Source of the DNA: Schmidtea nova
Taxonomy: Eukaryota
Reading direction: 5' to 3'
Length of the DNA: 64,000 bases
Assembly: GCA_044892505.1 (NCBI GenBank)
Contig: CM097883.1
Span: 424,080,001-424,144,000 of the forward strand
The translations under genes and the position numbers were made by a program. The notes beneath the pieces were generated by a model. The model saw nothing but the letters and a program-made list of their open reading frames with translations. It was not told the DNA's origin and searched no databases. Every line of letters begins with the position of its first letter. The first letter of the stretch is position 1. Of this stretch, positions 18,882-63,999 are shown one piece after another.

Positions 18882-18884
18882 TTT

Positions 18885-19165: not shown

Positions 19166-20261
19166 ATGAACAACCCAAACGGTCATGATGATACACCCAT
19201 GTCCACAAGCAATACCGGAAATGGCAATGACTATGCTAGCTGCCAAAAATTACCAGTTAACCAATATGGGGGCGATCCAGTGGAATTTGTCGACTTTATG
19301 GCAGATTACTATATGTATGCCACAGCCTATGGATGGAGCCAATCAATAATGGTGCAAAGACTACCGCTGTATTTAAAGGGAGCAGCAAGAGAAGCCTGGC
19401 AACAAATTGACAAAAGGACAATTGCCAATGACTGGACAAAACTGAAAGATGCCTTAGCCGCGAAGTTAGTCGGAGGAGACATCAAACGGATAATGAGGCA
19501 GAAATTCTATAATAGAGTACAAAAATCAGACAAATCCGTAAGTGAATTTACATACCATTTGACCACGCTTGCAGAAAAGGCCTTCGAAGTAAAACCGGAA
19601 CAGATTGAAGTGGCAAAGCAGGTAAAGGAACTATTACAAGATCAGTTCTTAGCGGGAGTAAAAGGGGAAATCAAAAAAGCCTTATGTTATGTAGATTTCA
19701 ATAACTTCGATGAGTTAATCAAAAAGGCTATGAAAATTGAATTAAATTTAAAAAGTGCAAAGCCGAAATCAGAATCCTTCGCCATTATCAATGAATCAAG
19801 AGAAAGATCCAATTCTCCAGTCAGAAACAATCGGCTCCAGCAATCAAGTAGTCCATCACCAAAATTTAGACCAAATTTTGAGATGAATAACACGTGTTCA
19901 AATTGACGAAAAAGAACAACCAATTCAATGCAGTTATTGTCAACGGATGGGACATCATGCCGATCAATGTTGGTTCAAGAACCGATCGCAAAAAAGCCCA
20001 ACTCCAATTCAATGTGATCACTGTCAAAAGATTGGTCACAATAACAATCAATGCTGGTCTAAAAATAATGTACAACGAAGCCCAAAACGAATGTGGCCAG
20101 ATTGAACTAATGATAATATACAATGCTACAATTGTGGAAGGAAAGGACATGTTTCACGTAATTGTTTTGCTAGTTCGAGATCTCCATCCACTTCGCCATC
20201 ACCACAACGAGATAGAGTGAACCTTCAAGGCCAAATTCAATGTCATTCATGTCGAGACTAT
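19166..20261 (+). pseudogene. gag: Gag (capsid domain plus four CCHC zinc knuckles), interrupted by a +1 frameshift and a TGA
   Basis: Capsid motifs WSQSIMVQRLPLYLKGAAREAW, QKSDKSVSEF and DQFLAG. In the frame of ORF 20217, upstream sequence reads CSYCQRMGHHADQC, CDHCQKIGHNNNQC, then TGA at 20103, then CYNCGRKGHVSRNC and CHSCRDYGHMARSC. The frame switches at about 19887-19903. Confidence 0.9.
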
Positions 20262-23200
20262 GGACATATGGCTAGATCATGCCCGAGAAATGTCGATAAA
20301 TTTCAGAAACCAATATTAAAAAAATCAATTCGTTTTCAAAATGATAGAATGCCAGCAGAAAATGTTGCTTTTGTTCAATTAGACGAATTTAATGATAGAA
20401 TTGAAAGTCAATTGAAAGAAATGGGTCGACGCTTGGATCGTTTAATGTCTAAGTTTGAATCTGATGAGGAATTAGATAATCACATGATGTATGGGTCGGA
20501 TATGACTGAAACGGAAGCGAAAGGAGTATGTACAAAGGACGATTTGGAAAGCGAAAAAGTTACAATAATGATGAAGAGACTTGAGAAATTGCTAGAAGCT
20601 AGCGCAAAAGAGTCATCCAAAATATTAATGTCAATTAAAAAGTTGAGTCAAATGTCACTGAGTATGAGAAAACTAAAATGCGTGATTAATTTGTGTGCAA
20701 ACTATTATCAAATAAATTTAGCAGATAGAGATGAAATCAAAGAGTTGATGAAAACATTTGGAAAAGCATTCCGAGAAAATGGATGGTTAGATTTTATTTT
20801 TATTGATGTTGTTAATGAATGTGATAAAAGTCTGATTACTTTTCGATGTGAAGCCTATGATTGTGTTAAAGATTTAAAAAGGAGACTAAGAGAAAAATGC
20901 GAAGGATGGGTAGTAGAATTAAAATTTAAAAATAGAGAATTAGATAACGAGGAATATTTGGTAGACTGTGGGTTTATACCAGGAGATAAAAATGAGTTAC
21001 AAATAGTCAATATGAGGAGTAGTTGTGAAATGGTGAAAAGTGATCCGAGGGAAGTGTTAAGGGAGCTATCTGATGTTTTATATATTGGCGATGAAAGCGA
21101 AATAAATGAAATAGTGAAATTAATTGAGAAATCTGAATTTGAGCAAAAGGATAAAATAGAAATTATCAACGTAATACGACCGCATCTGTTTAAAAGAACC
21201 AGATATAGTAGAAATTTAAAGAGATTACTGAGAAAATTGGGCAAAGAGCTTAGAGAAGATAGAGCAGAATTGAATTTATTAGTAATTGCAATAGAATACG
21301 AAGATATTAGAAAAACTGAGTATGTAGAAGAGCATTGGTGTACGAAAGTGCGGAAAATACGTAGAAGAGCTACGGAGATGTTAGGACAAGATGGAATTAT
21401 AGTATTGAAACATAAAGGTGAAGCACTGGATGACGATGAATATTTATACGACTGTGGATGCATGCCACAAGAATTAGATGAATATGGATATTTAAGTACT
21501 GACGGAAGTCAGGGATATTTAATTAACCATATAATAGCAAATAAAGAATTTAACCAGAGAATGCTTGGCAACGGGGAATCCTCCGACACAGAAGAAAAGA
21601 GAGATGAAATAGGAGAAAATGAAACCGCAATAGCTAACGATGAAGGTGATGATCAGAAAGAAGTCAATATTCAGGTAGCAGAAACTACAATTAGCAGAGA
21701 GACAAATGTCGAGAAAGTGGAAATGAATAATTGGAGTACTAAACCTAGAACTTTATATGAGATGAAGAAATATTTGGTAAATATAGAGCGGGAAGTTGAT
21801 GAAACTAAAGGAATAATAAGAAACCTAGTTAAAACTGTTTACCCAATTCTAAAAATAAAACCAGAAGCTGAGGAGGAATTGAAAGGGATGGTTGAGGAAG
21901 TGAAAGAGAGACTTCCAAAAATTGAGCATGAATTTGAAAAAAAGGGTGATTTCTGTAAAAGAGAAAGGATTGAAAAATTGATCGAAAATGGAATCGATAG
22001 AAAAACAGTGTTAACAAGTTTAACACATGTGGTTTCCGAAATTGGTATTCGTGCATTTACTAGGCCAGATCAGATTGAGAATTTGATTGACACTGCGGCT
22101 CGACTATTAAATGAATGTTTGATGAAAGGGATAAAAGAGCTTGGAGGGTGGAAAGCATTAAATTCATCTATAACAAAGAAAAGAAAGAAACAAGAAGATG
22201 AGAATCCACCTCAAAGAAAGTTGAACGAAAAAGTAGACCCTAAACTAAGAAAAACTACGATATTCCCTTGGGTGCTGTTCATGATGGTTATTTTATGCAC
22301 AATAATTGCACAAGCTACTTCATTGGTGGCATACGATTGCTCACAAACAGAAATGGGGAAAATTTATTCTGTGGTCGATATGACAGAATGCCCAGATGCA
22401 TACCCAAGAAAATTAAAAATTGAAAATGAAGCAAAATATCATGTTTACCAAGAATCCGATTTACGGCGTTCTCAAGTTAGGGAATGTATCGTTAAACGAA
22501 CCACGTTCGTATTCTTTTGTGGCAAATGGAGCCATACTTCGATGATAAAAATGCATGCTATTCCACGACCGGTGGACGTGTTACCAGAAAACTGTTTAAC
22601 GGCATTTCAAACAGGGGAATTAAAAATTAGTCCTGAAATTCGATTGAAAGCTCGAGTAAACCATCAAATCAGAGAAACATTAATTGTGAAAGGAGTAATG
22701 AAATCAGACGGCGATTGTGAGGGAGAACCGTATAAAATAAATGATCAAGTGATAAAACAAGCAGTAGTAATAGAGGAATATCTAACAGAATTGAGAGTAT
22801 TCGAAGGGTCGTTTGATGACGATACAGGAAAGTTACAAACTCATCCATTCTGTAATATGAAACAAACTAGTTGTCACACTGGGGAATTGATTCTTGTCTA
22901 TGATGTCAAGACTAATATATGCAATTTATCCCATTTAAAAACTATTAATTTCAAAGAATTGAGCGGAGAGCAATTTAGGGAAAGACCGGACAATTTTAAT
23001 GTGAATTATAAACCGAACAATACAGTTAGATCAACCCAAGTTTGGACGAGACAAACGGCAACAGTGTTAATGTCAACATTGCCAGCAGACAGCATGCGAT
23101 TCATAAAAAAGGACATAACGAGTAAATGTGGTCAAACTGTATATGCAACAAATTACAAAGGAGTTTATGTATCTAAAACAATCGTATATGAGGCTAAAAC

Positions 23201-48709: not shown

Positions 48710-50086
48710 TTACGCCAACCATCCTTTTTTTTCCGTTTTCTCATGCCTCTCCATCTCTATGTATAGCGTATCTGCATATAGTTGCTCCCATAGGTTTTCT
48801 TTCCTTATAAACATTGGTTCTCCTGCTGCTAGTTCGCATTCTGTCGTTGGTTTTTCGCTCGTACTCGAATGTTTGTCTGTTTCAAAGAACTTTTCTACTG
48901 GTTTTCCCATACTTTTGATTCTTATAATGACTCCTATTTTCAAGGGCCATTCTATTAGGTCATCGTATTCTCCTTTACATAGTGAGAAGAATATTGACAC
49001 GTGTGTTCCTTGTCCTCTTCCGTCTCCATTTGGGTATACTTTCAATCTTATTTTAACCCCGTTTTTCCATAAATAAAATGGTGGGCTTATTACTGTTGTT
49101 TTCGTCATATTTCTGGCTTCTGCTAGTTTGTCTCTGAAATCTGTTACCTTCCATAGGTAAGGTGCGATTGGTAAGTCCCTTCTTTCGTCAATTTCTCGTA
49201 TTAATTGATTATATTGTATTTTCATTCCTTTTCCTAATTCTTCTATGGCTATTATTTTCTTTTCCATTCTTTCGCGAGTTAGTTCAAACTGCTCTCTTGT
49301 TTCTAGTAGTAAACTCATCATTATCTTATGTGATTCTACTTCTTTTTCTAATTTCTGGATTGTCTGTTTCGTTTCTTTTGTCGTTTCGTTTATCATTTCC
49401 ACATGCGTTAGTGCTGCTTCTTCTAGGTGTTGTTTCATTGATTGCCGCGTCCGCTTTTCTTTGCATCCCTGTTTGTTATATGGACATTCTCTTGGTCTTT
49501 CGGTACATACTTTCAAATGTTCATGTAACTTTACTTCTTCTGTTATTTCGCAATTGTTTGGACATTTACTTACATATTGTCTGCATACTTTCTCCTCTGT
49601 TATATTCAAGTGTTCCTCTTCGATTTTTCTCCTTGTTTCTCGGACTTCACAATACTCGCATGCGATTTCTTCTTCTTTACATTCTTCCTTGTGTTGTTCT
49701 CTCTTCTTTAGAATTATTGTCTGTTGGCACTTCTCGCATTCGGTTCTTTTCTCCTCGCACTTTTCCATATGGTTTTCTAGATTACTTATTTGTCCTTGCC
49801 ATGTACAAGGTGTATTTACGCACTCCGTTGTGGTGCTCATAATTTCTCTTTGGGTTGCTTTGTCCGTTCTGGTTTCGTTCAACACTATTCTTCCTTCTTT
49901 ACATTCTGGGCATGTTGTTATTCCTATTACATCTAATTCTTGTATACACTTTGTACATATTCTGCATCCACATATCGTTTGTCTGGGTTCTCGTAATAAA
50001 TTGTTACACTTCCCGCATGTGAGTCTCTTGCTCCATTTTCTGTTTTCTAGTCTCAAAATTTCGATTATTCGTTCTTCTCTGTCCAT
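48710..50086 (-). CDS. TRAF-family protein (RING, TRAF zinc fingers, coiled coil, MATH domain), intronless
   Basis: RING CGKC...EPRQTICGCRICTKC...CPEC. TRAF fingers ECVNTPCTWQG...LENHMEKC and CPYNKQGC...HL. MATH YLWKVTDF...SPPFY...G.K.RLKVYPNGDG.G.GTHVSIFF...GEYDDLIEWP. Confidence 0.93.
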   Translation of the reverse strand: MDREERIIEILRLENRKWSKRLTCGKCNNLLREPRQTICGCRICTKCIQELDVIGITTCPECKEGRIVLNETRTDKATQREIMSTTTECVNTPCTWQGQISNLENHMEKCEEKRTECEKCQQTIILKKREQHKEECKEEEIACEYCEVRETRRKIEEEHLNITEEKVCRQYVSKCPNNCEITEEVKLHEHLKVCTERPRECPYNKQGCKEKRTRQSMKQHLEEAALTHVEMINETTKETKQTIQKLEKEVESHKIMMSLLLETREQFELTRERMEKKIIAIEELGKGMKIQYNQLIREIDERRDLPIAPYLWKVTDFRDKLAEARNMTKTTVISPPFYLWKNGVKIRLKVYPNGDGRGQGTHVSIFFSLCKGEYDDLIEWPLKIGVIIRIKSMGKPVEKFFETDKHSSTSEKPTTECELAAGEPMFIRKENLWEQLYADTLYIEMERHEKTEKKGWLA

Positions 50087-50179
50087 TTCCTACAATAATA
50101 TATACATTCGACTTGTCATTTATTTTTGGTTTTTTCTTGTTTTTATTTTTACATATTTACAATTTTCCGCTTTATTTAT

Positions 50180-50536: not shown

Positions 50537-50661
50537 TTTCTAAATTATATACATCATTTACTTTGTTTTTCTAGCTTTTTACAATTTTTATAATATCGAT
50601 ACCCATACTATTACGGTAATGCTTTGTTATTTACACTATTATTTACAGTCATAATCCGCCC

Positions 50662-53600: not shown

Positions 53601-56600
53601 CCATTTGGTAAGACACTCTTTCAGTTTCGTTTGTGGCAACTCTTGCTTCGGGCCTCTTTATTGTAATTCGTATAGTTGGTGTTGTTTGCTTATCTATTAC
53701 CTGGGGATTTTTGTTTTCTGTTCCCTGTGTCTCTGTTCTTCCACATTTTCCGAGGATGTAATCTCCTTTGGGTGACTGTTGTATTGTCATGGCTGCTTTA
53801 GGTGTTTGGTATTTTGCACATGCGATTGTGTTGTGTGATCTTGGATGCTTTTGTTTTCTAACGGTGCATATTTTGTACCAGGTATCTAGATCTAAGTCAT
53901 TGATCTCTATGATCTCTTGCTCGTGTTTTGAGATTCTGCAATCCATCGGGCTATTTTGTTCCGTGGTTTTGTCCTTTTTCGACCAACATACTCGTTCGAT
54001 TCCTTTTGCGTTTTTTATTTGTATTATTGCCCTTTCTTCACATGTCATTCCCTGACTTGGATTAATTAACGTTATAATCATTGTTAGTAATAGTAATTCT
54101 GGTTTGAAGAATGGTTTTATGGTTGATTTATAACCTGTTCTTTGGGTGTCTCCTTGGTCGTTTGTTCCTTGTTCTCTCTCTTCATCTCTTTGTTTTTCAT
54201 CTTCACCTTTCTTTCCTTCCTTGTCTCGTTTCTTGTCTTTTCTCTCGTTTTCCTCTTTATCGGGTGGTTCGTGATCGCTTGAATTTTCTGAGTTGTTACC
54301 GTCGTCACTATCTGTGTTGTCATCTCCCCCTGGCTCGTCGAAAATGTTGTCCTCGACATTGATTTCTTCTATTAGTTTCGCATACGCTAATGTCGTTAGA
54401 TTACTTGCCTCAAATTCTTGTGTTTCTACCTGCTCCGGTATTACTTTGTTAGTGGATTTATGTTCCAAGATTTCCTTTTTGGCCTTGATCCAATTGTTGA
54501 TGTATGTCTTCATCAATTCTTTCCATTTGCCTGTGTATTTTTCCTCTTTCGGGCTGGTTGTGATTTTTAGATCTTTTCTTTCCATAAACATCTTCAATAT
54601 CTCTGGCCATTTATACGTTATTAAGGCACTTCTTATGCACCAGTTTTGGTTATGTTCGGTAAACTTATTGATCCTGAATGCTGGTTCGTTAGTATTAGGA
54701 TTTATCCACGTAAGTATTGATTCTGTTAGTTCGACGTTGTTCATCATTGCTAGTACACTGGGTTTCTTGACCGTATCAGTTAGGTGATCTATTTCTTCCT
54801 GATTTGGGACGGTTTTAATGAAATTGACCATTTCCCAATTGTGTGTTAATAATGCTACATCCAATATCGAATTATCTTTATCTGTCTTTCCTGTAAGTCC
54901 TGCACCTGCTTTGTATAGTTCTTCTAATACCTTTGTTTTCGTTTTGGCCCTTGCTGCAAATACCATAAGTGTATCTCCTTTCTCGTCTATCATATTCATA
55001 TTGCTTCCGCAATTTAGCATTACTCTTGCAATTTCCATTACTTTCCTATCTTTGCCATTTCGTAGAGCTCTATGTATGGGCATTATTCCGTCTTTTGGTA
55101 ATAGGAATGTTACTGGCATCTCCTTTTTTATTATTACTATGTCGTTACCATTGTATGTTCCTTTTGCGTATGCGTGTACTTTTTCAACTAATGCGCCGAG
55201 TATTTCCAGTGCATGTTTACTATTCTCGAATTCCGGTAACAATTCTTTTGCTTTTTCTTGTATCGCATCTAGTCTAGCTTGGTATGGTGCTTCTGCTTTG
55301 AAGAGTGGTGTGAGTTTCTTGTTACTTTCTCTTTCTTTTTTCTCTAAAACCTGTTTGCATTTTTCGGGATGGTTTAAGATTTTTACTAATTCCTCATATT
55401 CGCTTACTATCGTCTGGTATTTCTCGTTAAAATTGTTTATATCTTTGTATGTTATTAGTTTATCAAGTGGTTTCGCACACCATTTCCTAATCTTATTGAA
55501 TAAGGCTTCCTTCTCTTTATCGAATTTGTATTCTTCTTCATTCTTTGTGATGTTTATGTTTCCTCTGTCTAATAAGGTTAGTAATGTCTTCTGATCACAA
55601 GTAAATTTCAAAAGGTATCTTAACAGTGCGTTTTGTCCTTCGCTGTATACTTCGTTTATGTCTAAGACCCATGTATCATCTTCTGGTCGTTTCCATTTGA
55701 TTAACTTACGGATCGTGTTGCATTTACCAATTTTGATTGCCTCTTCGATAATGTCTCCTTTAACTAGTTCGTCTATCTCCCAAGTGGAGTTAGCTATTAT
55801 GTATTTCAGCATTGGTTGGTGAGAACTCCATATTACGTGATTTAGCACTGTTTTGTCCTCTCTATCTCGTTCTGTCCAACTGAAATGAGCTTTTATCAAT
55901 AGGTCTATCATTTCTTTATCTGCTTGGTGGATTGCGGCTGTCATTAATGGAGTTTCTTGTTCCCGATTCCCTACGTCCAAGTTTTGGTTTGTTTCTTTTG
56001 CGATTTTTAGGAATTCTTTTGCTCTTTCAATGTTTTTACACTCTATCGCATTATGTAAGGCTGGTTGTCCTCCTACATCTTTCAATAAGAGTATTTCAGG
56101 GATTTTTTCCAATAATTCAGAAATAATTGGTTCGGTTGGTAATCCTTGTGCGTAACGGCTAATTATATGTCTAATATCCCTTGATATGCCTGCTTCGTCT
56201 CTAACATGCCATCTTCCCATTATCTCTCTCGCCTTCAATATGATTTCTTTATTTCTGATTTCCTTTTGCCTTATTTCTGCTTTGTCGTCTTTAGTTGCGT
56301 TAGTTCTGAGCATATTTATCCTGGCTGTTTGTGATCTAGTTATTATTCGATTTTCTGGTGTTGTAGTTATCGTTTTAGGCACCTTCTTACATCTGCAGGT
56401 GTTTACGTATATGGGTCGTATTAACGGTCGATTTATTAGCTTAACTTTGACATTGTTGTCCTTTTTGTATATAATTTCATAAGGTCCTCTTCCAGGTCTT
56501 TGGAGTTTCTTAACAGTTCCGGGTATTATTTCGGGAGTTTCTATTATCACCCAATCTCCTGGTTTTAGATCGTTCGCTTTAACATTTTTCTTCTGGTCGT

Positions 56601-59600
56601 GTAAGTCCTTATAACTTTCCTGATAAAATTTAATGTTGAGTTCTGCCGTTTTCCATATTTCCTGCATTCTTTCTTTGAATTTGGTTACGTAGTCGTCATC
56701 TTCCATATATTGCGATAATGGTGGCTGATACTCTAAATCTATGGGCATGTTGCATTCTCTTCCATACATAAGTTGAAATGGGCTTAGTTTTGTTGCTGCA
56801 TGTATCGACATTCGGTATGCCATTAAACATAATTTTATGTATTCATCCCAGTCAGTTTGGTGTCTGCTGACGTAGTTTGATAACATTCTAATCAATGTGC
56901 CGTTGAATCGCTCCGTTTGTCCATTCGTTTGCGGGTGATATGGTGAAGTTCTCAATTTTGCTATTCTGAAGTAGTTTGTCACCTCGTTCAATAATTCACT
57001 CATAAAATTAGTTCCTTGGTCTGTGAGTATTTGTTTTGGAGTTCCGTATCTGCAACATATTTCTTCCACTAGAATTTTTGCTACGGTTTTTGCTTTTTGG
57101 TCTTGCATGGCAAATGCTTCCGGGAATTTCGTCAGATAATCCGTTATTACCAATATATAAATATTTCCGTTTAAACTTTCTGGTAATGGCCCTATTACGT
57201 CCATTGCTATAGTTGTCATTGGCTCTGCTGGTATTGGCATTGGTTGTAGTGGGTTTTTCCATTTCTTCCCACTATCCTTTCTGGTTGCGCAGGTTAGACA
57301 ATTTTTAATCCATTCCTTTATATCTTCTTCCATTGTTCGCCAATAATATTTTTGTCTCATACGATTTATGGTCTTTTTCTCGGACATATGACCTCCCAAT
57401 TTCCCATCATGGTATTGGATCATTATCTCTTTCCTTCTGTTTTCCGGTAAACACATCAATCTCTTTTCCCCGTCGTGTATTAATAACCATCCTTTATTTA
57501 TTATGTAGCGATGTTGATATTTTCCTATATGTTCCTTTAATTCCTTATTATCCTTAAATACCTCCATATTTCGAGACGTTAGGAACTCTATGATCTGTCC
57601 CAATTCTTTGTCTTCCTGTTGATCTTTCTTTAACTCACTAAAATCTAGATCCTCCGCTATTAATACACAAATTCGTTGTACATCAGGATCGGTTAGTTCT
57701 GGAAATGTCAGTCTTGACATACAATCTGCATTCGCATTCGCTCTTCCTGATTTAAATTTTATGTCCGGTGAGTACTCCTGTAACTGCATTGCCCATCGCA
57801 TTAATCTACTGGATGTTTCCTTGTGCTGTCCTAACCATACAAGCGGTTGGTGATCTGTTGTTATGCAGATGATGTGTCCCCATAATAAATATTTAAAATG
57901 TTTTATTGCTAGTATAATCGCTAATGCTTCCCGTTCTGTTACTGAGTAATTTTTCTCATGCTTTTTGAATGTCCGGCTATAATATCCGATTACGCGTTCC
58001 TTTCCTTCGTCGTCGTATTGTCCTAATACGGCTCCTGCTGCATATCCGCTTGCATCTGCTGCAAGTAGGAATGGTTTCTTGAAGTCTGGGTGTACCAATA
58101 TAGGTGCGGTTATCAGTTTATCTCTTAATGTCTCGAAAGCTGTCTGCTGTTCGTCTCCCCATATGAATGATACATCTTTCTTGACTAGTTCCTGTATAGG
58201 TTTTGCTATTCCGGCGTAATCTTTTATAAACTTTCTGTAGTATCCACACAACCCAAGAAACTCTTGTATCTGGGTTATTGTTTTTGGTACTGGACATTCT
58301 TTTACCTTGTCGATATTTCTAGGATCCGGTTCTTTTCCTTTTGCTGACACTATATGTCCTAAAAATGTTACTTTCTCTTTCGCCCAGTCACACTTGGATG
58401 GCTTGAGTTTTAACTTCCATTGTCTAAGTCTAACGAATACATCTCGAATATCCTGTATGTGTTGTTCAAACGTGCTAGAATAAATCAATAAATCGTCTAT
58501 GTAGACCATACACTGCTTTATCCCATGGGTGACGAAATTCATGCATCTCTGAAATGATGCTGGTGCGTTTGTTAGTCCAAATGGCATCTTTCGAAATTGA
58601 TATAGGTCTCTACCGATGGTAAAGGCAGTTTTCTCCTTATCTTCTTCCTTCATTTTTATTTGCCAATATCCGCTTTTCAGATCTAACGACGTAAAATATG
58701 CTGCTCCTTGTAATGTTAATAGCATTTCATTAATGTCTGGTAATGGGTAAGTATCCCTTTTTGTCACTGTATTCAATCTTCGATAATCTATACAGAATCT
58801 CTGTGTTCCATCTTTCTTCTTTACCATTACCACTGGAAATTGCCAGGGTGAACAACTTGGTTCGATTACTTCTGCATCCAACATTTTCTTCACTTCTGCT
58901 TCTGCTACTGCTTTCTGTGCTTCCGCTAATTTGTACGGCCTTAATGCAATTGGTGTTTCATCTGTTAATGGTATTGTATGTAGTGTGACATCACATGTTC
59001 CTAGATCTAAATCGGATGCTGCAAATATATCCTTATACTCTATCAAAAGTTTTTCTAACTGCTTCTTTTGATCCTCGTTTAATAATTCACTATCAATATT
59101 CCAGGTTGGTTCTTTATCTTTCTCTGCCCCTTCTATTGGCAGTTCAATATCCATCATTGGGGTTAGTTTGCCTAATCTTTCGTTTTCGTAGATTATTTTG
59201 TCCTCTTCATCGAAGTTTACTATGTTTATTGGGATTTCTCCATTGTCATTTATGTTGACTAGTCCTCTTGCCATTGGCAACGCTTTTCTTTTCTCGAATC
59301 TTTTACTTGGTTCGAAAATCATATCGCCTTGGATTGTCGGATCTATTTTTACGTAACATATTTTCTCCTTTCTTGCGGGTATTATCATTTGCTTTGAACT
59401 TGTCACTTTGGCTTCTATTGCGCATATTTGTCCTGTGCGATCTTTTAGTCTCATTGTTCCGAGATCGATTACAATCTCTTTAAATAAGGCTGGCATCAAA
59501 TCTGTTCCGATAATGCAAGGCACGCTTAATGCTGGTATGACTGCTACGTACGTATCGATTTCCGTATTTAAGTGGCGTATTTTTACCCACCATCTTCCTG

Positions 59601-62600
59601 CTACTTCTACAACTTCTTTGCTACATGCAATTACATGGACGTTTGTCCTTTCTATATCTCGTCTTTGCTCTTGTGGTATCCATTTGATGTCGATGGCGGA
59701 AATGTTTGCTCCAGTGTCGATCATTGCTTCGATTTCTCTTCCATTAATTTCTATTGTCGTGGTTAGTACTGGACCTGTGTTTGATGACATTACTGCGATC
59801 GTGTGTGTATCTCCTTGTGGATCTACGCTTCTACATCTTCTCATTTTATAATCTTCTGGTATCATGGGGTATACATTTGTCATTGGCATCATTTGCATCG
59901 TGCTATTTTTTCCTCCTTGTAGTGGTTCTTGATACATGGTTGGTGGAGGTGCGTAACATTTCCATGCGTCGGCTGGATTCTTTTCGATGTATTGTGGTGC
60001 TTGGTTCTTATACACTTGTTCTCCCTTATAGTCGTCATCGTCATCGTCGTCGTCACTTGAATCATTTTGGGTTTTATATCCTTTCATCCTCTCCCATAAA
60101 CCTTTTCTTTCTCCCTTGAGCTGTTGTCTTGCTTGTTCGTCATTCATTATCTTTTTAAATTTTCGTCCTACTTCTTCATCTGTTCCCTTCATTTTTGCGA
60201 GTATCTTCAACAATCTCTTTATTCGATGTATGTCCTTTGAGTGTCCGTGCAACACCATCGTTTTCGCAAGGAATGGTAAAAATCCTACTACCATTTTCCA
60301 ATTCACTTTCTTTTCTCTCTTGTAGATGTCAAAACACGCGAGCATTTGCGTTATTATCACTCTGACGATTTGGATTATTAATATTACCCCTAGTATTCCA
60401 GCCATCATTTGTCCGAATATCAAGAATCTTCCCCACATTGCTTTCATCATATTTTCGGTGGCTTTCTTGAAATGTGCTGGTGACAACAACAGTTCATAAT
60501 TCGGTCCTTCTCGATAATTCGTTCCTCCCGTTATCGTTACGATATTTGACAGTAATGCTTCTCTTCTCGCTGGAAATAATATATTCTGCCTTGCTGCTTC
60601 TAAATCCTTTGGACTATATATTCCGTTGTTTGAGACATCTACGTCGCTGAATTGCCTATCCTTTGACAACTGCATTAGCTCGAATTCTCTTGGTGCTATC
60701 ACTTCGGATCTTCCTGGGAACATAACCCATTTACCATCTGGTTTCTGATAAAGCGGTCCATACGCATTACTACAGTTGAATGGATTTGGTTCGAATCCTG
60801 GTGGATTGATGATTCTCGTCACTGGTTGAACGTATCGTACTTTTCCTTTGTAATCGATTTCTAACTCATTTGTACAGGTTCCAGGTTTCAACTGTGTTGT
60901 TGCTGCTAGTGACGCGTGTGTCTTTTCGCAAATGTATACATACATTGCTTCTCCAACCACTCTTCCGAAATGTCCTTCTCTTAGTGGTAATAATGGCATC
61001 GCGCTATCTGGATTCGTAATCGCTATGGCCAACTTTGTCTTTAATATTTCTCGATTCAGTATACAATCATTGTTTATTAGATCGTAGTACACTTTTTGTA
61101 ATGAGGCTTGTCCTCTATGGAATAGGAAATCCATTTTATTATTCACATACAGGTGTAGTTTGATATCTATTGTGTCGATTTTGTGTTTCGCATTCGGCAC
61201 TTCTTGTTTTGACACATATATTCCTGGGTAATTTGTTTCGTATACCGTTGTACTACACTTAAGGGTTGCTTTCCCTTTTATGAACCTCATTCCCACATCC
61301 TGATTTGTGGTTATCAACACTGTTGGTGTGGCTCTCATCTCTATCCGTTTTTCTCTATGATCCGTTTTCAGTTGTCTTTTATTCTCTAAAGCTTCCTTGA
61401 GATGCTTTGCTCTAGCTTTGTCGTCATCGTCTTCTTCCTGAAACGTTTTTCCTTGAATTTCGTCGAATTTTGCTCCTTGTAGCAGTTGTAGTTGACATTC
61501 ATTTACCTTTGGTTTGTATATTAATGTTGACATTCCCGTTTGACACATGCTCCTATCGATTTGACACATGGATAACGTTTTCATTTCTCCTGTTGTTGGT
61601 TCGAAGAATGCTTCATAGCTTTTTAATTCGACTATATACGTATCCATCACCACTAAGTTAGTTGCGGGTACTCCGAATATCGGGTAGGTTTCTCCTTGAC
61701 AATATCCTTCTCCTCCCGTAATCCGTCCTGCTACATAGTATGTCTGTTGCATCATCATTCCTGGCTTTCCTCTTATCTTGATTTTATCTCTTGTTGTTAC
61801 TTCTCCATGTTTAAACAGTGCTTCGCAGTCTTCTCCTTGTAACACGATTGGTTCTCTTTCCGTTCCTGGCATGACAATTGCTGAATAGTGTCCTCTCCCG
61901 CAGTAGAATGCGAATCTCGTCTTCTGCACCTTACATTCATTCACCATTGTCTTTATAAGTTCTGCTTCTTGATACACGTGGTACCATTGTTCCTTTTTAA
62001 TCTTTTGCAACTCTACTGGAGTCGCATCTTTGCATTGCTCCGTACCTCTCAATGAATACTTTTCTCCTAACTTCATTTGGTCGCAATCAAACACTTCGAA
62101 TGCTGTTGCGCTATCGGTGCTAATCATCCATATCAACATCATCATTATTATAGAACTCAAATTCATTGATGACTTCGCGTTTCCCGTTCCTGCTTGTTCT
62201 TTTGCTAACTCTTCCAATATTTTTTCGAATTTCTTTTTCATATTCTTCGCTTGCGTTTTCTTCTGGTTAGTTTTTATAAATGTTTCCCATCCTCCTTTGT
62301 TAATGACGTATGGTTCTATTTCTCTCGCTATAATTTTTGCGGTATTTTTTATATGTCTCTCTAATGCAGTGGGTTTTGGTCGACCTCTACTCAATGTCAA
62401 CAGATTGTATATCGTGTATGCAATGGCTATTACGTATTTGTTATCCGTTTCCGCTCCTTCTGTCAGCTTCTTTATTAACATAGTGGTTCCTTGCCAGTCT
62501 AAATGGTTTGACTTCGTCTTTTCTTTTATGAATTCCGGTAAGATGGGTGCGATTGCGCTGTGTAGTGACTTCGCCTTTTCGCTTATCTCAGTTATACGCC

Positions 62601-63999
62601 AGCATTTTCTTAATTCCGGATCAATTATTGCCAATATTTCCATTATTGTTTTCGATATCCATTCCTCCCCCTGACATATTGGTGTTGTCTCTTTTTCTTT
62701 CATCTCCGCAATTTTATTTAGTTTCCTTAGGCATAATTCCCATTGATCTTGTCTCTTTTCATCTTTATTTCTTATAACTACAGTTGCTGGGTCTGTCTTA
62801 GGTCTACCTCTAGGTCGTTTATCCATTCCTGTACCTGTTTCCACAAACCTTGTTGCCCGTCCTGTTTCTTCCGTGACATCTCTTGGTTCGTTAGCTCTTT
62901 CTTCTAACCATCTTTCCATTTCCTGGGTTAATTGTACATTTTCGGCATACGCTCCTCTGGTTTCATCTTCTGTTAAATCGTTGACTTCTTCTACTATTAT
63001 TTCCTGTTCGACTTCTGTTTCTCCGGTGTTGGTTACTTGTATTGCCGTAGGTAATTCTTGTATTCTTTCGAAAATATTGTCGTCTTTTTCCTTTGTTAAT
63101 TCGGTTAATTCTTCTATCATATCGTCGCTGTCTGTAAATATTTCGTCCACGTCATATGGTTGTGGTGGAGTCCTTTCTCTATTTCCTCTGGGTGTTGTCT
63201 CAGATCGTCTCGAACTTGTCCCTGGTGTTAGTGCTGATTTCATCGGGCTCGGCGTACTTATACTTCCGTGTGGTTTATGGTTTTCTTCTTTACGTTTCAA
63301 TGGTTGACCCGCTATTGCTTCTACTGTCAAGGTATTCATGAGGTCTAATTGTGCTGGTGTTATTCCGATTTCCAAACTGTTATCTAATGATCGTCCTTGG
63401 TGTTGTAAATGGAATGGTGGTTCGTATCTCAATTTCTTTTTAATATCTCGAATTTTTTCTGCTATTCCTACCCACAACTCTTCCTTATCCTTGTTTGGGT
63501 ATATTATTCTTAAATGTACTTTTTGTGGAATTTCCTGCGAGAATTCTTGATTTCTCCATTTCCTAATTACGTGGTCTAGTTGTTCCGGACACCACTCGTT
63601 AACTCTTTTATATTCCGCGATTGCTTTTGCTACTTTACGCAAGCATGTTATATCCTCCCCATTTACCACGAAAAAATCTGCGAGACCCTTTATTACTTTT
63701 CTCTTACCGTGCGCATTAGTTTTTAATATCTCGACAAATTCTTCCGTTTTTTGCTTTTCCCTTTCTAACCACATAGCCGCTGTTTCTGGTCCATCTAGGT
63801 CTATTGGCGTAGCTTTCCTTGTCACCATGCAAACCCTTCCTATCTCTGGTTCGCAGTCATCTTCAATTCCTCTTTTATATTCTTCTTCATATTCCCCTTC
63901 TTTTGGTTCCCAACATTTTCCTTTCTCGTTCCATTGTTTTTCTACGGGTGTTCGTATTCGTCTGTTGAGATTGAGTTCTTCTAATACATTTTCCCACTC
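50662..63999 (-). CDS. pol: Giant polyprotein (>4400 aa, 5' partial): UBL, Bcl-2-like, signal plus chuvirus-like glycoprotein, PR, RT, RNase H, INT, ankyrins, two FN3-like membrane proteins
   Basis: Hand translation shows the frame stays open from 63828 to the window edge, so the true start and gag lie outside. Signal plus FEVFDC at about 62160-62083, TM at about 60430-60250, MIDTG at about 59715, YIDD at about 58500, the RNase H motifs DAS...EREA...TDH, HHCC plus D..D..E integrase at about 57420-56750, ankyrin motifs at 56085-54815, and TMs at 52402-52336 and 50917-50845. Confidence 0.95.
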   Translation of the reverse strand, partial: EWENVLEELNLNRRIRTPVEKQWNEKGKCWEPKEGEYEEEYKRGIEDDCEPEIGRVCMVTRKATPIDLDGPETAAMWLEREKQKTEEFVEILKTNAHGKRKVIKGLADFFVVNGEDITCLRKVAKAIAEYKRVNEWCPEQLDHVIRKWRNQEFSQEIPQKVHLRIIYPNKDKEELWVGIAEKIRDIKKKLRYEPPFHLQHQGRSLDNSLEIGITPAQLDLMNTLTVEAIAGQPLKRKEENHKPHGSISTPSPMKSALTPGTSSRRSETTPRGNRERTPPQPYDVDEIFTDSDDMIEELTELTKEKDDNIFERIQELPTAIQVTNTGETEVEQEIIVEEVNDLTEDETRGAYAENVQLTQEMERWLEERANEPRDVTEETGRATRFVETGTGMDKRPRGRPKTDPATVVIRNKDEKRQDQWELCLRKLNKIAEMKEKETTPICQGEEWISKTIMEILAIIDPELRKCWRITEISEKAKSLHSAIAPILPEFIKEKTKSNHLDWQGTTMLIKKLTEGAETDNKYVIAIAYTIYNLLTLSRGRPKPTALERHIKNTAKIIAREIEPYVINKGGWETFIKTNQKKTQAKNMKKKFEKILEELAKEQAGTGNAKSSMNLSSIIMMMLIWMISTDSATAFEVFDCDQMKLGEKYSLRGTEQCKDATPVELQKIKKEQWYHVYQEAELIKTMVNECKVQKTRFAFYCGRGHYSAIVMPGTEREPIVLQGEDCEALFKHGEVTTRDKIKIRGKPGMMMQQTYYVAGRITGGEGYCQGETYPIFGVPATNLVVMDTYIVELKSYEAFFEPTTGEMKTLSMCQIDRSMCQTGMSTLIYKPKVNECQLQLLQGAKFDEIQGKTFQEEDDDDKARAKHLKEALENKRQLKTDHREKRIEMRATPTVLITTNQDVGMRFIKGKATLKCSTTVYETNYPGIYVSKQEVPNAKHKIDTIDIKLHLYVNNKMDFLFHRGQASLQKVYYDLINNDCILNREILKTKLAIAITNPDSAMPLLPLREGHFGRVVGEAMYVYICEKTHASLAATTQLKPGTCTNELEIDYKGKVRYVQPVTRIINPPGFEPNPFNCSNAYGPLYQKPDGKWVMFPGRSEVIAPREFELMQLSKDRQFSDVDVSNNGIYSPKDLEAARQNILFPARREALLSNIVTITGGTNYREGPNYELLLSPAHFKKATENMMKAMWGRFLIFGQMMAGILGVILIIQIVRVIITQMLACFDIYKREKKVNWKMVVGFLPFLAKTMVLHGHSKDIHRIKRLLKILAKMKGTDEEVGRKFKKIMNDEQARQQLKGERKGLWERMKGYKTQNDSSDDDDDDDDYKGEQVYKNQAPQYIEKNPADAWKCYAPPPTMYQEPLQGGKNSTMQMMPMTNVYPMIPEDYKMRRCRSVDPQGDTHTIAVMSSNTGPVLTTTIEINGREIEAMIDTGANISAIDIKWIPQEQRRDIERTNVHVIACSKEVVEVAGRWWVKIRHLNTEIDTYVAVIPALSVPCIIGTDLMPALFKEIVIDLGTMRLKDRTGQICAIEAKVTSSKQMIIPARKEKICYVKIDPTIQGDMIFEPSKRFEKRKALPMARGLVNINDNGEIPINIVNFDEEDKIIYENERLGKLTPMMDIELPIEGAEKDKEPTWNIDSELLNEDQKKQLEKLLIEYKDIFAASDLDLGTCDVTLHTIPLTDETPIALRPYKLAEAQKAVAEAEVKKMLDAEVIEPSCSPWQFPVVMVKKKDGTQRFCIDYRRLNTVTKRDTYPLPDINEMLLTLQGAAYFTSLDLKSGYWQIKMKEEDKEKTAFTIGRDLYQFRKMPFGLTNAPASFQRCMNFVTHGIKQCMVYIDDLLIYSSTFEQHIQDIRDVFVRLRQWKLKLKPSKCDWAKEKVTFLGHIVSAKGKEPDPRNIDKVKECPVPKTITQIQEFLGLCGYYRKFIKDYAGIAKPIQELVKKDVSFIWGDEQQTAFETLRDKLITAPILVHPDFKKPFLLAADASGYAAGAVLGQYDDEGKERVIGYYSRTFKKHEKNYSVTEREALAIILAIKHFKYLLWGHIICITTDHQPLVWLGQHKETSSRLMRWAMQLQEYSPDIKFKSGRANANADCMSRLTFPELTDPDVQRICVLIAEDLDFSELKKDQQEDKELGQIIEFLTSRNMEVFKDNKELKEHIGKYQHRYIINKGWLLIHDGEKRLMCLPENRRKEIMIQYHDGKLGGHMSEKKTINRMRQKYYWRTMEEDIKEWIKNCLTCATRKDSGKKWKNPLQPMPIPAEPMTTIAMDVIGPLPESLNGNIYILVITDYLTKFPEAFAMQDQKAKTVAKILVEEICCRYGTPKQILTDQGTNFMSELLNEVTNYFRIAKLRTSPYHPQTNGQTERFNGTLIRMLSNYVSRHQTDWDEYIKLCLMAYRMSIHAATKLSPFQLMYGRECNMPIDLEYQPPLSQYMEDDDYVTKFKERMQEIWKTAELNIKFYQESYKDLHDQKKNVKANDLKPGDWVIIETPEIIPGTVKKLQRPGRGPYEIIYKKDNNVKVKLINRPLIRPIYVNTCRCKKVPKTITTTPENRIITRSQTARINMLRTNATKDDKAEIRQKEIRNKEIILKAREIMGRWHVRDEAGISRDIRHIISRYAQGLPTEPIISELLEKIPEILLLKDVGGQPALHNAIECKNIERAKEFLKIAKETNQNLDVGNREQETPLMTAAIHQADKEMIDLLIKAHFSWTERDREDKTVLNHVIWSSHQPMLKYIIANSTWEIDELVKGDIIEEAIKIGKCNTIRKLIKWKRPEDDTWVLDINEVYSEGQNALLRYLLKFTCDQKTLLTLLDRGNINITKNEEEYKFDKEKEALFNKIRKWCAKPLDKLITYKDINNFNEKYQTIVSEYEELVKILNHPEKCKQVLEKKERESNKKLTPLFKAEAPYQARLDAIQEKAKELLPEFENSKHALEILGALVEKVHAYAKGTYNGNDIVIIKKEMPVTFLLPKDGIMPIHRALRNGKDRKVMEIARVMLNCGSNMNMIDEKGDTLMVFAARAKTKTKVLEELYKAGAGLTGKTDKDNSILDVALLTHNWEMVNFIKTVPNQEEIDHLTDTVKKPSVLAMMNNVELTESILTWINPNTNEPAFRINKFTEHNQNWCIRSALITYKWPEILKMFMERKDLKITTSPKEEKYTGKWKELMKTYINNWIKAKKEILEHKSTNKVIPEQVETQEFEASNLTTLAYAKLIEEINVEDNIFDEPGGDDNTDSDDGNNSENSSDHEPPDKEENERKDKKRDKEGKKGEDEKQRDEEREQGTNDQGDTQRTGYKSTIKPFFKPELLLLTMIITLINPSQGMTCEERAIIQIKNAKGIERVCWSKKDKTTEQNSPMDCRISKHEQEIIEINDLDLDTWYKICTVRKQKHPRSHNTIACAKYQTPKAAMTIQQSPKGDYILGKCGRTETQGTENKNPQVIDKQTTPTIRITIKRPEARVATNETERVSYQMEVLCLALILIIIKRLEEGIEIETMTITEVEDTQNTNIKCWARNNEEIGVNEIRKSRKPTTNKVIKVSEVKADKMYKLCLLEKETNKKGTTKCKTFQPGEVIKFRRRTRKRNKQIKRKMNITLEIKEIEPNVKGVCWRKYEKETNKRTTPQCQTSTGATTIQIKGLESKQTYEICLVKKNDQITINDLECGIYTTSSGTRTKTLTRKNKRRQRNKGKPKYTTTFKNNKQPISQEVTTKSEKKTSATLTLWKIENKTLEICWIIVQKYIRRQSRECRKTNKEIKIEKLQFNSEYEVCTIEKTDALGNQQERCETYYTPANATSKGITRKLEFRELSQTNEQMDAEKTITDPQAKWTPEEVIKEVKRKQEEREQLMRKLKGQYGIMFNQSEPTQTDENKEIKELIGLGILTATIPVIIALSAIWLRKISPRKSTTQWLNIDNTSHGVEILEEKAREEPNKKEAKSGKLGINNKDKEIKEIKGEEKKYERRTRSLPQSSKWLGLTIILTLINREEAINPQTGIKVTNVQEVGKICWNREDEPIGKDNPLKCIIRKSDQDVVRIEGMYRGIMHRICIIGKEKKAGLPKTVVCQKYETPGLEWYRVKPTKKEIKNTIDQPATQIRNTTDKPGEGEKSTNKTRERISPQQECVCIALILAMSKRIDKGIIIEQMAITIRKTSSNKLCWGTYNEPRKEYQVQTSDESRTNKEIEIQEIQMNEEGSICIWEKGIQEGIEHCKTFQKGEILKFDEEELTKTERTLTLTGLDQTVKGICWTKHNPEGEEDNLTHCKEIKNKEKVELKKMKVNRTYAICTFTRKSSEKPECGLYQISEKLQQQIEPGNMENRTKENNVKQLLNRHWSTQEVMNKVKSQIQKEKKPEAQTQNEIKANQNKRETNSGKTIIGLMSIGILIAYGILTTSIIVYWRYRKRNKATAIQWPDIKIMKLGIEIPEEIQKEFQRRTKGKEFWKQIEDEERYEEKTIMMV

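What the first reader, a model, noticed from the sequence alone, without database searches (positions are those of the whole stretch)
20217..63999. Two related giant Ty3/Gypsy elements carry a chuvirus-like fusion glycoprotein inside the polyprotein, between gag and protease
Seen: both elements have an internal signal peptide, then a ~600-aa Cys-rich ectodomain and TM, then PR-RT-RH-INT in the same frame (element 1 at 22263-24115, element 2 at 62160-60250). The two ectodomains align by eye: LVAYDC vs FEVFDC, YHVYQE in both, CIVKRTTFVFFCG vs CKVQKTRFAFYCG, and NDCKLNKEIL...AITNP vs NDCILNREIL...AITNP. Established: env-bearing LTR elements normally place env 3' of pol as a separate ORF. The xYDC start and C-x-LN motif resemble Chuviridae/Jingchuvirales glycoproteins, which are known to have been captured by BEL/Pao elements. 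Inference: this is a lineage of potentially infectious, enveloped Metaviridae whose polyprotein is threaded through the ER and cut by signal peptidase plus the element's protease. Two diverged copies with the same layout argue for a conserved design rather than a chance fusion.
Basis: partly seen in the sequence, partly recalled or inferred. Interest (0 to 1): 0.95.

Follow-up and report, generated by a model that had tools for sequence, protein, structure and literature searches.

The report
Gypsy retroelements with built-in viral envelope
Two large Ty3/Gypsy retrovirus-like elements carry a chuvirus-type, herpes-gB-fold membrane-fusion glycoprotein inside their polyprotein upstream of the protease, a real and conserved design that has already been described in planarian Burro elements and in nematode, bryozoan and flatworm gag-env-pol Gypsy elements.

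Summary
Element 1 (18072-35327, +) is a complete LTR element. Element 2 (minus strand, 50662 to beyond 63999) is a frame of at least 4,445 codons without a stop.

Both carry, upstream of PR-RT-RH-IN and in the same frame, a signal-peptide-like segment, an ectodomain of about 550 aa with 14 cysteines, and a TM helix. This module matches Pfam PF24664 (E 5e-84 and 1.5e-70). Named relatives are chuvirus glycoproteins. AlphaFold models of both (pLDDT 88 and 82) match herpesvirus gB in the PDB and chu-like virus glycoproteins in BFVD, so it is a class III fusogen.

At least 12 further diverged polyproteins from metagenomes share the module in the same position, and glycoprotein and pol identities co-vary. 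The design is therefore inherited, not a chance fusion.

Both assembly gaps lie in the non-coding 3' part of element 1 and affect no claim. Element 1's gene is broken at least three times. Element 2's gag lies off-window.

The design is already published: Burro (2019), nematode elements (2022), and GAG-ENV-POL gB-type errantiviruses (2023/2026). The ER-threading and signal-peptidase mechanism is plausible but untested.

Verdict: new member of a known kind, modest interest.

The parts
18072..35327 (+). Element 1: complete LTR retroelement. Its length of about 17.3 kb includes two assembly gaps of estimated size.
   Evidence: 810-nt direct repeats at both ends, 99.88% identical. TG..CA termini and AAGC on both flanks.
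18072..18881 (+). Element 1, 5' LTR
18885..18902 (+). Element 1 primer-binding site (starts TGG, 3 nt after the LTR)
   Evidence: read from the sequence; inference from the usual LTR-element layout
19166..29219 (+). Element 1 gag-GP-pol gene, broken. The gag part is out of frame with the rest (1-2 frameshifts, possibly 1 stop). The pol part has one premature stop. At least 3 disruptions in all.
   Evidence: tblastn of intact relatives uses two frames; stop counts; Pfam domains
19364..19630 (+). Element 1 gag (Retrotrans_gag) domain
   Evidence: PF03732 E 1e-08. Homologous to the N-termini of P0001-4, P0014, P0022 and P0023.
20238..20285 (+). Element 1 CCHC zinc knuckle (nucleocapsid)
   Evidence: PF00098, weak, E 0.005-0.009. 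Aligned to the CCHC region of relatives.
22242..22322 (+). Element 1 internal signal-peptide-like segment: basic n-region, hydrophobic core, A-x-S before the mature end
22323..23960 (+). Element 1 glycoprotein ectodomain (14 Cys), chuvirus-like class III fusogen
   Evidence: PF24664 E 5.3e-84. AF2 pLDDT 88. Foldseek gB E 5e-15. Chu-like virus glycoproteins E 1e-43.
23961..24017 (+). Element 1 glycoprotein transmembrane anchor
   Evidence: Kyte-Doolittle 2.35 over 19 aa; long helix in the model
24540..24833 (+). Element 1 aspartic protease
   Evidence: PF00077 / PF13975
25485..25961 (+). Element 1 reverse transcriptase domain
   Evidence: PF00078, in two pieces
26148..26537 (+). Element 1 RNase H
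   Evidence: PF17917 / PF17919
26853..27413 (+). Element 1 integrase (H2C2 zinc finger plus catalytic core)
   Evidence: PF17921, PF00665
29628..31091 (+). Element 1 accessory ORF: ISG20/REXO-like DEDDh 3'-5' exonuclease
   Evidence: PF00929, weak. Profile against the PDB: ISG20L2 E 3e-20, ISG20 E 1.9e-17. Same gene 3' of pol in L001, L002 and L006.
31337..34284 (.). Element 1 non-coding 3' region with (TAT)n and other tandem arrays. Holds the first N run (33081-33230) and ends at the start of the second (34285-34436).
34504..34515 (+). Element 1 polypurine tract
   Evidence: read from the sequence
34518..35327 (+). Element 1, 3' LTR
50662..63999 (-). Element 2 polyprotein frame: at least 4,445 codons without a stop, still open at the window edge. 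The N-terminus, including any gag, lies off-window.
62101..62181 (-). Element 2 internal signal-peptide-like segment (A-x-A before the mature end)
60409..62100 (-). Element 2 glycoprotein ectodomain (14 Cys), chuvirus-like class III fusogen
   Evidence: PF24664 E 1.5e-70. AF2 pLDDT 82. Foldseek gB E 1.8e-13.
60352..60408 (-). Element 2 glycoprotein transmembrane anchor
   Evidence: Kyte-Doolittle 2.55
59488..59760 (-). Element 2 aspartic protease
   Evidence: PF00077
58348..58824 (-). Element 2 reverse transcriptase
   Evidence: PF00078 E 8.5e-37; Ty3 is the best PDB hit
57772..58161 (-). Element 2 RNase H
   Evidence: PF17917 / PF17919
56878..57447 (-). Element 2 integrase
   Evidence: PF17921, PF00665
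54814..56088 (-). Element 2: two ankyrin-repeat blocks inside the polyprotein, C-terminal to integrase
   Evidence: PF12796; PDB ankyrin/DARPin hits in two places
48710..50086 (-). Element 2 accessory ORF: TRAF-like (TRAF zinc finger plus MATH domain)
   Evidence: PF22486 E 8.6e-21, PF02176 E 7.7e-09. About 25% identical to animal TRAF2/4-like proteins.

Best explanation
Both loci are Ty3/Gypsy (Metaviridae-type) LTR retroelements of the gag-env-pol type. A complete precursor of a chuvirus-like (Jingchuvirales-type, Pfam PF24664) class III, gB-fold fusion glycoprotein is built into the single polyprotein. It sits upstream of protease-RT-RNase H-integrase and keeps its own signal peptide and C-terminal membrane anchor.

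The module was acquired once in an ancestor of this lineage and has since diverged together with pol. These points are shown.

The likely working (inference) is as follows:
1. The cytosolic gag part is translated first.
2. When the internal signal emerges, the ribosome is targeted to the ER and the ectodomain is translocated.
3. The TM helix stops transfer, so PR-RT-RH-IN is made on the cytosolic side as a very long tail.
4. Signal peptidase frees the glycoprotein's N-terminus in the lumen, and the element's own protease cuts on the cytosolic side.

This gives gag, Env and pol in equal amounts at one membrane, as needed for an enveloped particle.

Element 2 is coding-intact as far as the window shows. 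Element 1 is a young insertion (LTRs 99.88% identical) of an already defective copy.
For: Identity of the glycoprotein:
- PF24664 at 282.8 and 238.4 bits.
- Exhaustive phmmer found 1,387 relatives. The 650-aa stand-alone relatives include the Lishi spider virus 1 and Soybean thrips chu-like virus 2 glycoproteins, matched end to end.
- The AF2 models are confident.
- Foldseek's top 50 PDB hits are all herpesvirus gB for both models. The BFVD top hits are chu-like virus glycoproteins, TM 0.54-0.66.
- A profile of A2 against PDB sequences gives 30 of 31 hits to gB.

Retroelement identity:
- Ty3 Gag-Pol is the best PDB hit, E 6.5e-114.
- LTR, TSD, PBS and PPT are present in element 1.

Conserved design:
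- In 14 of 14 polyproteins (element 1, element 2, P0001-4, P0009, P0010, P0013, P0014, P0016, P0020, P0021, P0022) there is a hydrophobic core just upstream, a TM just downstream and exactly 14 ectodomain cysteines.
- The n-h-c signal followed by a D-C dipeptide mirrors the N-terminus of stand-alone chuvirus glycoproteins.
- At least 8 relatives have the glycoprotein followed by RT-RH-IN in one ORF (P0017 as far as RH). P0001-4 and P0022 also have gag in that ORF.
- Glycoprotein and RH-IN pairwise identities co-vary.

No conserved methionine precedes the signal in these polyproteins. This argues for translation as part of the polyprotein.
Against: - No experimental or expression data exist. 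Signal-peptidase cleavage and the topology rest on hydropathy and the (-3,-1) rule only; SignalP and DeepTMHMM were not available.
- N-glycosylation sequons are few and not enriched in the ectodomain.
- Fusion loops and trimerisation were not examined.
- Element 1 is defective, and element 2 is incomplete in the window.
- A spliced env-pol message cannot be excluded.
- In one relative (L006) the gag-CCHC part is a separate ORF from the glycoprotein-pol part, so a single ORF is not universal in the lineage.
Confidence: 0.8

Rival explanations
1. The same elements, but Env is produced mainly from a spliced subgenomic RNA, as in retroviruses and Drosophila gypsy. On this view the in-frame position is a by-product of compact coding, and the internal signal acts as an N-terminal signal of the spliced product.
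For: Spliced env messages are the rule in retroviruses and errantiviruses (established knowledge). In L006 the gag-CCHC part and the glycoprotein-pol part are separate ORFs.
Against: No conserved start codon precedes the signal in the 14 polyproteins. After the TM the frame runs on into PR-RT-RH-IN without a stop in element 2 and in at least 8 relatives, so any such message would still encode an Env-pol fusion.
Confidence: 0.15
2. The glycoprotein module no longer serves particle infectivity. It is kept for another use, such as anchoring the polyprotein to membranes or mediating cell-cell fusion and spread between tissues of one animal.
For: The sequence cannot tell these uses apart. Burro1 RNA is tissue-enriched in planarians (PMC8532177).
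Against: The whole class III fold, all invariant cysteines, the signal and the TM are retained over deep divergence. This is what a working fusogen needs.
Confidence: 0.1
3. A chance event: a chuvirus-derived endogenous viral element landed inside a Gypsy copy and happens to be in frame, or the arrangement is an assembly chimera.
For: Chuvirus glycoprotein EVEs are often found next to LTR-element fragments in arthropods (PMC10084718).
Against: Two elements only 32-37% identical share the layout. At least 12 further polyproteins from independent assemblies share it. Glycoprotein and pol co-diverge. The gaps lie outside the coding parts.
Confidence: 0.01

Closest known systems
Burro / GYPSM1 giant Gypsy elements of dugesiid planarians (Grohme et al. 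2018; Arkhipova and Yushenova 2019, PMC6431247)
   Same: Both are Ty3/Gypsy with a very long single polyprotein (4,873-5,140 aa in Burro, at least 4,445 aa in element 2). In both, env lies in frame between gag and pol and hits mononegavirus-type fusion glycoproteins. Both carry ankyrin repeats and a MATH/TRAF module, and both sit in an AT-rich host genome.
   Different: No BIR or BCL2-like domain was found. The dUTPase-like domain between PR and RT is only hinted at. In element 2 the TRAF-MATH module is a 3' accessory ORF. In S. mediterranea Burro it lies inside ORF1, and in the Dugesia tigrina element it is an upstream ORF. Element 1 is half the size and carries an ISG20-like exonuclease gene that is not listed for Burro. 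The host was not identified, and no Burro sequence was available for direct comparison.
GAG-ENV-POL Ty3/gypsy 'errantiviruses' with HSV/gB-type ENV in Nematoda, Bryozoa and Platyhelminthes (Chary and Hayashi, eLife 2026, PMC13524379); nematode elements of Sacco et al. 2022
   Same: Same gene order. Same gB-type class III Env, flanked by a signal peptide and a TM. Env co-diverges with pol in both.
   Different: That work treats gag, env and pol as ORFs allowing gaps between them. Here env and pol, and in relatives gag too, are one continuous frame. Their element sequences and host list were not available for comparison, and Sacco et al. is not held in the library.
Anakin: mosquito BEL/Pao elements with a captured chuvirus glycoprotein (Dezordi et al. 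2020, PMC7642597)
   Same: An LTR retroelement that captured a Chuviridae-like glycoprotein.
   Different: A different superfamily (BEL/Pao, not Ty3/Gypsy). There the glycoprotein is a separate gene, not part of the polyprotein.
Glycoproteins of Jingchuvirales (chuviruses), Pfam PF24664
   Same: Full-length homology at 22-28% identity. The cysteines are invariant, and the signal/mature-end motif and the fold are the same.
   Different: No chuvirus polymerase or nucleoprotein gene is present in the window. The glycoprotein sits in a retroelement polyprotein and forms its own sequence cluster at 28-44% identity.
Drosophila gypsy and other classical errantiviruses
   Same: Ty3/Gypsy backbone with an acquired viral fusogen.
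   Different: In classical errantiviruses env is a separate ORF 3' of pol and of the baculovirus-F/paramyxovirus-F type (class I). Here env is class III, upstream of pol and in frame.
Polyproteins of flaviviruses, pestiviruses and alphaviruses with internal signal sequences
   Same: Proposed working only: internal signal and stop-transfer segments thread one polyprotein through the ER membrane, and host signal peptidase plus a viral protease cut it (established knowledge).
   Different: No homology. This is an analogy for the mechanism, not membership.

Membership tests
Ty3/Gypsy (Metaviridae-type) LTR retroelements | Domain order PR-RT-RNase H-integrase, with pol closest to Ty3-type pol | tested here: met
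   Pfam order in both elements. The best PDB hit is Ty3 Gag-Pol 7q5b at E 6.5e-114, ahead of caulimovirus, foamy virus and MLV.
Ty3/Gypsy (Metaviridae-type) LTR retroelements | LTRs with TG..CA ends, 4-6 bp target-site duplication, PBS and PPT | tested here: met
   Element 1: 810-nt LTRs 99.88% identical, TG..CA, AAGC on both flanks, PBS starting TGG, and a purine tract. Element 2: not testable, because the 5' end is off-window and the 3' LTR could not be delimited.
Monjiviricetes/Jingchuvirales fusion glycoprotein (Pfam PF24664) | Score above the curated cut-off over most of the model | tested here: met
   282.8 bits over positions 5-635 of 653 (element 1) and 238.4 bits (element 2), against a cut-off of 27. 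Named chuvirus glycoproteins come back as hits.
Class III viral fusion proteins (gB / rhabdovirus G / gp64 type) | Multi-domain, beta-rich fold with a long central helix, matching solved class III structures | tested here: met
   AF2 pLDDT 88 and 82. Foldseek probability 1.00 at E 5e-15 and 1.8e-13 to gB over about 630-660 columns; all top-50 hits are gB.
Class III viral fusion proteins (gB / rhabdovirus G / gp64 type) | Hydrophobic bipartite fusion loops; trimer | not tested
   Model coordinates cannot be inspected with these tools, and no multimer prediction is available.
Burro giant Gypsy family (planarians) | env in frame in the polyprotein between gag and pol | tested here: met
   gag lies in the same ORF in relatives P0001-4 and P0022. 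gag is off-window for element 2 and out of frame in the defective element 1.
Burro giant Gypsy family (planarians) | Giant size (internal region up to 25 kb, ORF1 of about 4,900-5,100 aa) | tested here: inconclusive
   Element 2 has at least 4,445 codons and is incomplete. Element 1 is only about 17.3 kb.
Burro giant Gypsy family (planarians) | Accessory domains: ankyrin and MATH/TRAF | tested here: met
   Element 2 has two ankyrin blocks in the polyprotein and a TRAF-MATH module as a 3' ORF. Neither is present in element 1.
Burro giant Gypsy family (planarians) | Accessory domains: BIR, BCL2-like, Ubi2/SUMO-like | tested here: not met
   No such Pfam hit, even at E up to 5, in the regions searched. 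HHpred-level sensitivity was not available.
Burro giant Gypsy family (planarians) | dUTPase-like domain between PR and RT | tested here: inconclusive
   A profile of the PR-RT linker gives two dUTPases as the only non-RT PDB hits, but at E 0.9-1.3. There is no Pfam dUTPase hit.
Burro giant Gypsy family (planarians) | Host is a dugesiid planarian; sequence similarity to Burro-1 to -4 / GYPSM1 | not testable with these tools
   The host was not identified. No Repbase or planarian sequences are at hand.
Exogenous chuvirus (Jingchuvirales) | RNA polymerase (L) and nucleoprotein genes accompanying the glycoprotein | tested here: not met
   All ORFs of 150 aa or more in 18-64 kb are accounted for by retroelement or accessory domains. 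There is no Mononegavirales polymerase hit.

The most novel reading that the evidence does not exclude
These elements may sample a broad lineage of enveloped Ty3/Gypsy retrovirus-like agents that is still active and extends well beyond planarians. At least 14 polyproteins below 50% mutual identity turn up in unrelated environmental assemblies. Members translate gag, a class III Env and pol as one ER-threaded polyprotein. They also carry captured host-type innate-immunity genes (an ISG20-like exonuclease, a TRAF-like adaptor, and RING and ankyrin modules) as accessory genes. That combination has not been described as a unit.
Probability: 0.25. Interest if true: 0.6.

Novelty: new member of a known kind. 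Interest (0 to 1): 0.3.

Why it matters
Capture of a viral fusogen is the step that turns a retrotransposon into a retrovirus-like agent. This lineage shows an unusual solution: env lies inside the polyprotein and uses an internal signal peptide. That solution is stable over deep divergence, and it gives a natural series of sequences for studying how class III fusogens and retroelement polyproteins co-evolve.

The main point is already in the literature, so the value here is confirmatory. This work adds four things:
- a clear assignment to the chuvirus-type family and the gB fold for both copies;
- a conserved signal, 14 cysteines and TM across 14 polyproteins;
- the absence of a conserved start codon before the signal;
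- a shared ISG20-like accessory gene.

Tried and rejected
- **Host identification failed.** The TRAF-like ORF is not on record as an exact protein. Its homologues are animal TRAF2/4-like proteins at about 25% identity, with no taxon signal. The window has no tRNA genes and no Rfam matches.
- **Word-indexed searches found little.** The stand-alone glycoprotein search gave only 4 hits. The exhaustive search was needed.
- **Plain sequence search of the glycoprotein against the PDB gave nothing**. Only the profile and the fold search showed gB.
- **Several regions stayed unidentified.** These are element 2's in-window N-terminus (613 aa), element 1's region between CCHC and the signal, and about 1,600 aa after element 2's ankyrin blocks. 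None has a Pfam, PDB or in-family match.
- **dUTPase between PR and RT is inconclusive**.
- **Element 2's 3' LTR could not be delimited** without the off-window 5' LTR.
- **The relatives' contigs show no terminal repeats**, so DNA or RNA origin cannot be told.
- **Two papers are not held in the library:** Grohme et al. 2018 and Sacco et al. 2022. No supplements are held for PMC13524379.
- **One coordinate slip was corrected:** one search was mis-framed and was repeated correctly.
Full report
**What is in the window**

A self-comparison shows two 810-nt direct repeats, 18072-18881 and 34518-35327, that are 99.88% identical. They start with TG and end with CA and are flanked on both sides by AAGC. 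A TGG-initiated primer-binding site follows the first repeat, and a purine tract precedes the second. This defines element 1 as a complete LTR retroelement of about 17.3 kb on the + strand.

On the minus strand, the ORF listing reports one ORF of 4,388 codons ending at 50662. The same frame stays open for the 57 further codons up to the window edge. Element 2's polyprotein therefore has at least 4,445 codons, and its N-terminus lies outside the window. At the coding-strand composition, a frame this long has a chance probability of about 1e-140.

**The assembly gaps (tested first, as asked)**

The two N runs are at 33081-33230 and 34285-34436. Both lie in element 1 between its last ORF (ending at 31091) and its 3' LTR. 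That stretch is made of (TAT)n and other tandem arrays. No reading frame claimed by the finding crosses them.

Only two things depend on the gaps: element 1's total length and the scaffold link between its body and its 3' LTR. That link has independent support from the purine tract directly before the 3' LTR, the identical 4-bp flanks and the near-identical LTRs.

**The observation**

In both elements a short, strongly hydrophobic segment sits directly before the ectodomain, preceded by basic residues and followed by small residues at -3 and -1. A 19-residue TM segment follows the ectodomain. Protease, RT, RNase H and integrase follow in the same frame. The two elements are 32% identical over 1,195 residues and barely alignable as DNA.

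**What the inserted module is**

- **Family.** Pfam PF24664 (Monjiviricetes_fusion) matches at E 5.3e-84, covering model positions 5-635 of 653, in element 1, and at E 1.5e-70 in element 2.
- **Relatives.** An exhaustive phmmer search of 1.84 billion representatives with element 1's module found 1,387 relatives. The closest, at 28-44% identity, are embedded in long proteins. Behind them is a large set of stand-alone proteins of about 650 aa, matched end to end at 22-28% identity.
- **Named relatives.** These are the glycoproteins of Lishi spider virus 1 and Soybean thrips chu-like virus 2, and a beetle endogenous copy.
- **Structure.** An 89-sequence alignment (A2) gave a confident AlphaFold model (pLDDT 88, pTM 0.65). 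A 49-sequence alignment did the same for element 2 (pLDDT 82.4).
- **Fold search.** Against the PDB, Foldseek returns only herpesvirus glycoprotein B in the top 50 for both models (E 5e-15 and 1.8e-13, probability 1.00, about 630-660 aligned columns). Against BFVD the top hits are chu-like virus glycoproteins (E about 1e-43 to 1e-40, TM 0.54-0.66), followed by other Monjiviricetes glycoproteins and gB.
- **Profile search.** A sequence profile of A2 also finds gB weakly but almost exclusively (30 of 31 hits).

The module is therefore a chuvirus-type class III fusion glycoprotein. This is more specific than the 'gypsy Env-like' HHpred hit reported for Burro in 2019.

**The backbone**

The best solved relative of element 2's PR-IN region is the Ty3 Gag-Pol polyprotein (E 6.5e-114 over RT-RH-IN), ahead of caulimovirus, foamy virus and MLV enzymes. 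Element 1 has a Retrotrans_gag domain and a CCHC knuckle upstream.

**State of the copies**

Element 2 is uninterrupted as far as the window shows. Element 1's gag-GP-pol gene is defective:
- Its gag part is in a different frame from everything downstream. This needs one or two frameshifts, possibly with one stop.
- Its pol part carries one premature stop.

That is at least three disruptions. With LTRs differing at one position, element 1 looks like a recent insertion of an already defective copy. Sequencing or assembly error cannot be excluded.

**Is the layout a conserved design?**

Yes.
- A search restricted to giant proteins found four polyproteins of 3,700-4,057 aa with the glycoprotein at 37-39% identity.
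- The exhaustive search added more. One cluster holds a 4,844-aa member.
- Mapping element 2's domains onto these shows the glycoprotein followed by PR and/or RT-RH-IN in one ORF in P0001-4, P0009-11, P0013, P0015, P0017, P0020-22 and P0028.
- Element 1's gag is homologous to the N-termini of P0001-4, P0014, P0022 and P0023. So gag, glycoprotein and pol sit in one ORF in at least five relatives.
- In all 14 polyproteins examined, the ectodomain has exactly 14 cysteines, with a hydrophobic core just upstream and a TM just downstream.
- The signal has the n-h-c layout of the N-terminal signal of stand-alone chuvirus glycoproteins, and no methionine is conserved before it.
- Pairwise identities in the glycoprotein and in RH-IN rise and fall together. 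This indicates one ancestral capture followed by co-divergence.

**How it most likely works**

The domain identities, their order, the single frame, and the conservation of signal, TM and cysteines are shown. The rest is inferred:
1. The internal signal targets the nascent polyprotein to the ER and the ectodomain is translocated.
2. The TM stops transfer, so pol is made in the cytosol as a long tail.
3. Signal peptidase cuts after the signal, and the element's protease makes the cytosolic cuts.

This resembles in principle the processing of flavivirus, pestivirus and alphavirus polyproteins. I put about 0.6 on this mechanism and more than 0.9 on the identity statements. The main rival is a spliced env-pol message. 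It cannot be excluded without transcript data, but it is weakened by the lack of a conserved start codon and by the frame running on into pol.

**Comparison with what is known**

- Arkhipova and Yushenova (2019, PMC6431247) described planarian Burro/GYPSM1 elements. These have ORF1 of 4,873-5,140 aa, env in frame between gag and pol, and hits to arthropod and fish mononegavirus fusion glycoproteins. The authors called it the first such case. Ankyrin and MATH/TRAF modules are also listed.
- Chary and Hayashi (bioRxiv 2023, eLife 2026, PMC13524379) report Ty3/gypsy elements of Nematoda, Bryozoa and Platyhelminthes with gB-type Env in GAG-ENV-POL order, and Env co-diverging with pol. They cite Sacco et al. 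2022 for nematode elements. They also note that the chuvirus-like glycoprotein is gB-like and occurs next to gypsy pol.
- Dezordi et al. (2020, PMC7642597) described chuvirus glycoprotein capture by BEL/Pao elements.

Element 2 shares Burro's size class, its ankyrin repeats and a TRAF-MATH module, here as a 3' ORF. BIR and BCL2-like domains were not found, and dUTPase is inconclusive. The host could not be identified, and no Burro sequence was available. Membership in Burro proper is therefore open. If the host is a dugesiid planarian, these are probably just copies of a described family.

**Novelty and score**

This is a new member of a known kind. The added details are modest:
- both copies are unambiguously assigned to PF24664 and the gB fold;
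- the signal, 14 cysteines and TM are conserved in 14 polyproteins;
- no start codon is conserved before the signal;
- an ISG20-like exonuclease gene is shared by element 1 and three relatives.

Interest is 0.3.

- Alignments across element 1's breaks were summarised as counts and outer bounds only.
- Consensus lines printed by the alignment tool were not used.
- None of the fetched contigs looked human.

Noticed in passing
window 8555-16281: Inverted repeats of about 920 nt, 92.8% identical (8555-9475 against 16281-15381), flank a protein-primed family-B DNA polymerase. The polymerase is split into two ORFs (9655-10860 and 10870-13404, minus strand; PF03175, plus a weak endonuclease VII hit). 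This looks like a degraded Maverick/Polinton-like or other pPolB-bearing element. A further 68%-identical fragment lies at 4277-4721.
   Followed up: partly
window 29628-31091 (+); also L001 13798-16390, L002 12169-13473, L006 21702-22841: A conserved accessory gene 3' of pol encodes an ISG20/ISG20L2/REXO-like DEDDh 3'-5' exonuclease (profile against the PDB, E 3e-20). It is present in two copies in L001. A retroelement carrying a relative of an interferon-induced antiviral exonuclease is curious.
   Followed up: partly
window 48710-50086 (-): Element 2 carries a TRAF-like ORF (TRAF zinc finger plus MATH) just 3' of the polyprotein. It is about 25% identical to animal TRAF2/4-like proteins and lacks the RING domain that most of those hits have.
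   Followed up: partly
window 50662-55550 (-), residues about 2760-4388 of element 2's in-window frame: About 1,600 residues after the ankyrin blocks have no Pfam, PDB or in-family match, yet the frame stays open. They include two strongly hydrophobic TM-like segments (in-window residues 3811-3829 and 4308-4326).
   Followed up: partly
L001, L003, L006 (relatives): Some relatives have two or three protease-like domains and ankyrin repeats between the glycoprotein and RT. L006 also has a RING-finger ORF after the exonuclease gene. Accessory content varies widely within the lineage.
   Followed up: partly
window 35639-36167 and 42613-42794: Short direct and inverted repeats, 87-90% identical and about 7 kb apart, lie between the two elements. 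They may be the ends of another mobile element. No ORF longer than 123 aa lies between them.
   Followed up: no
window 44000-46000: A stretch richer in G+C (0.39-0.47) with two minus-strand ORFs (44006-44602 and 44780-45277) that have no family match. It could be element 2's 3' LTR region, but this could not be shown.
   Followed up: no
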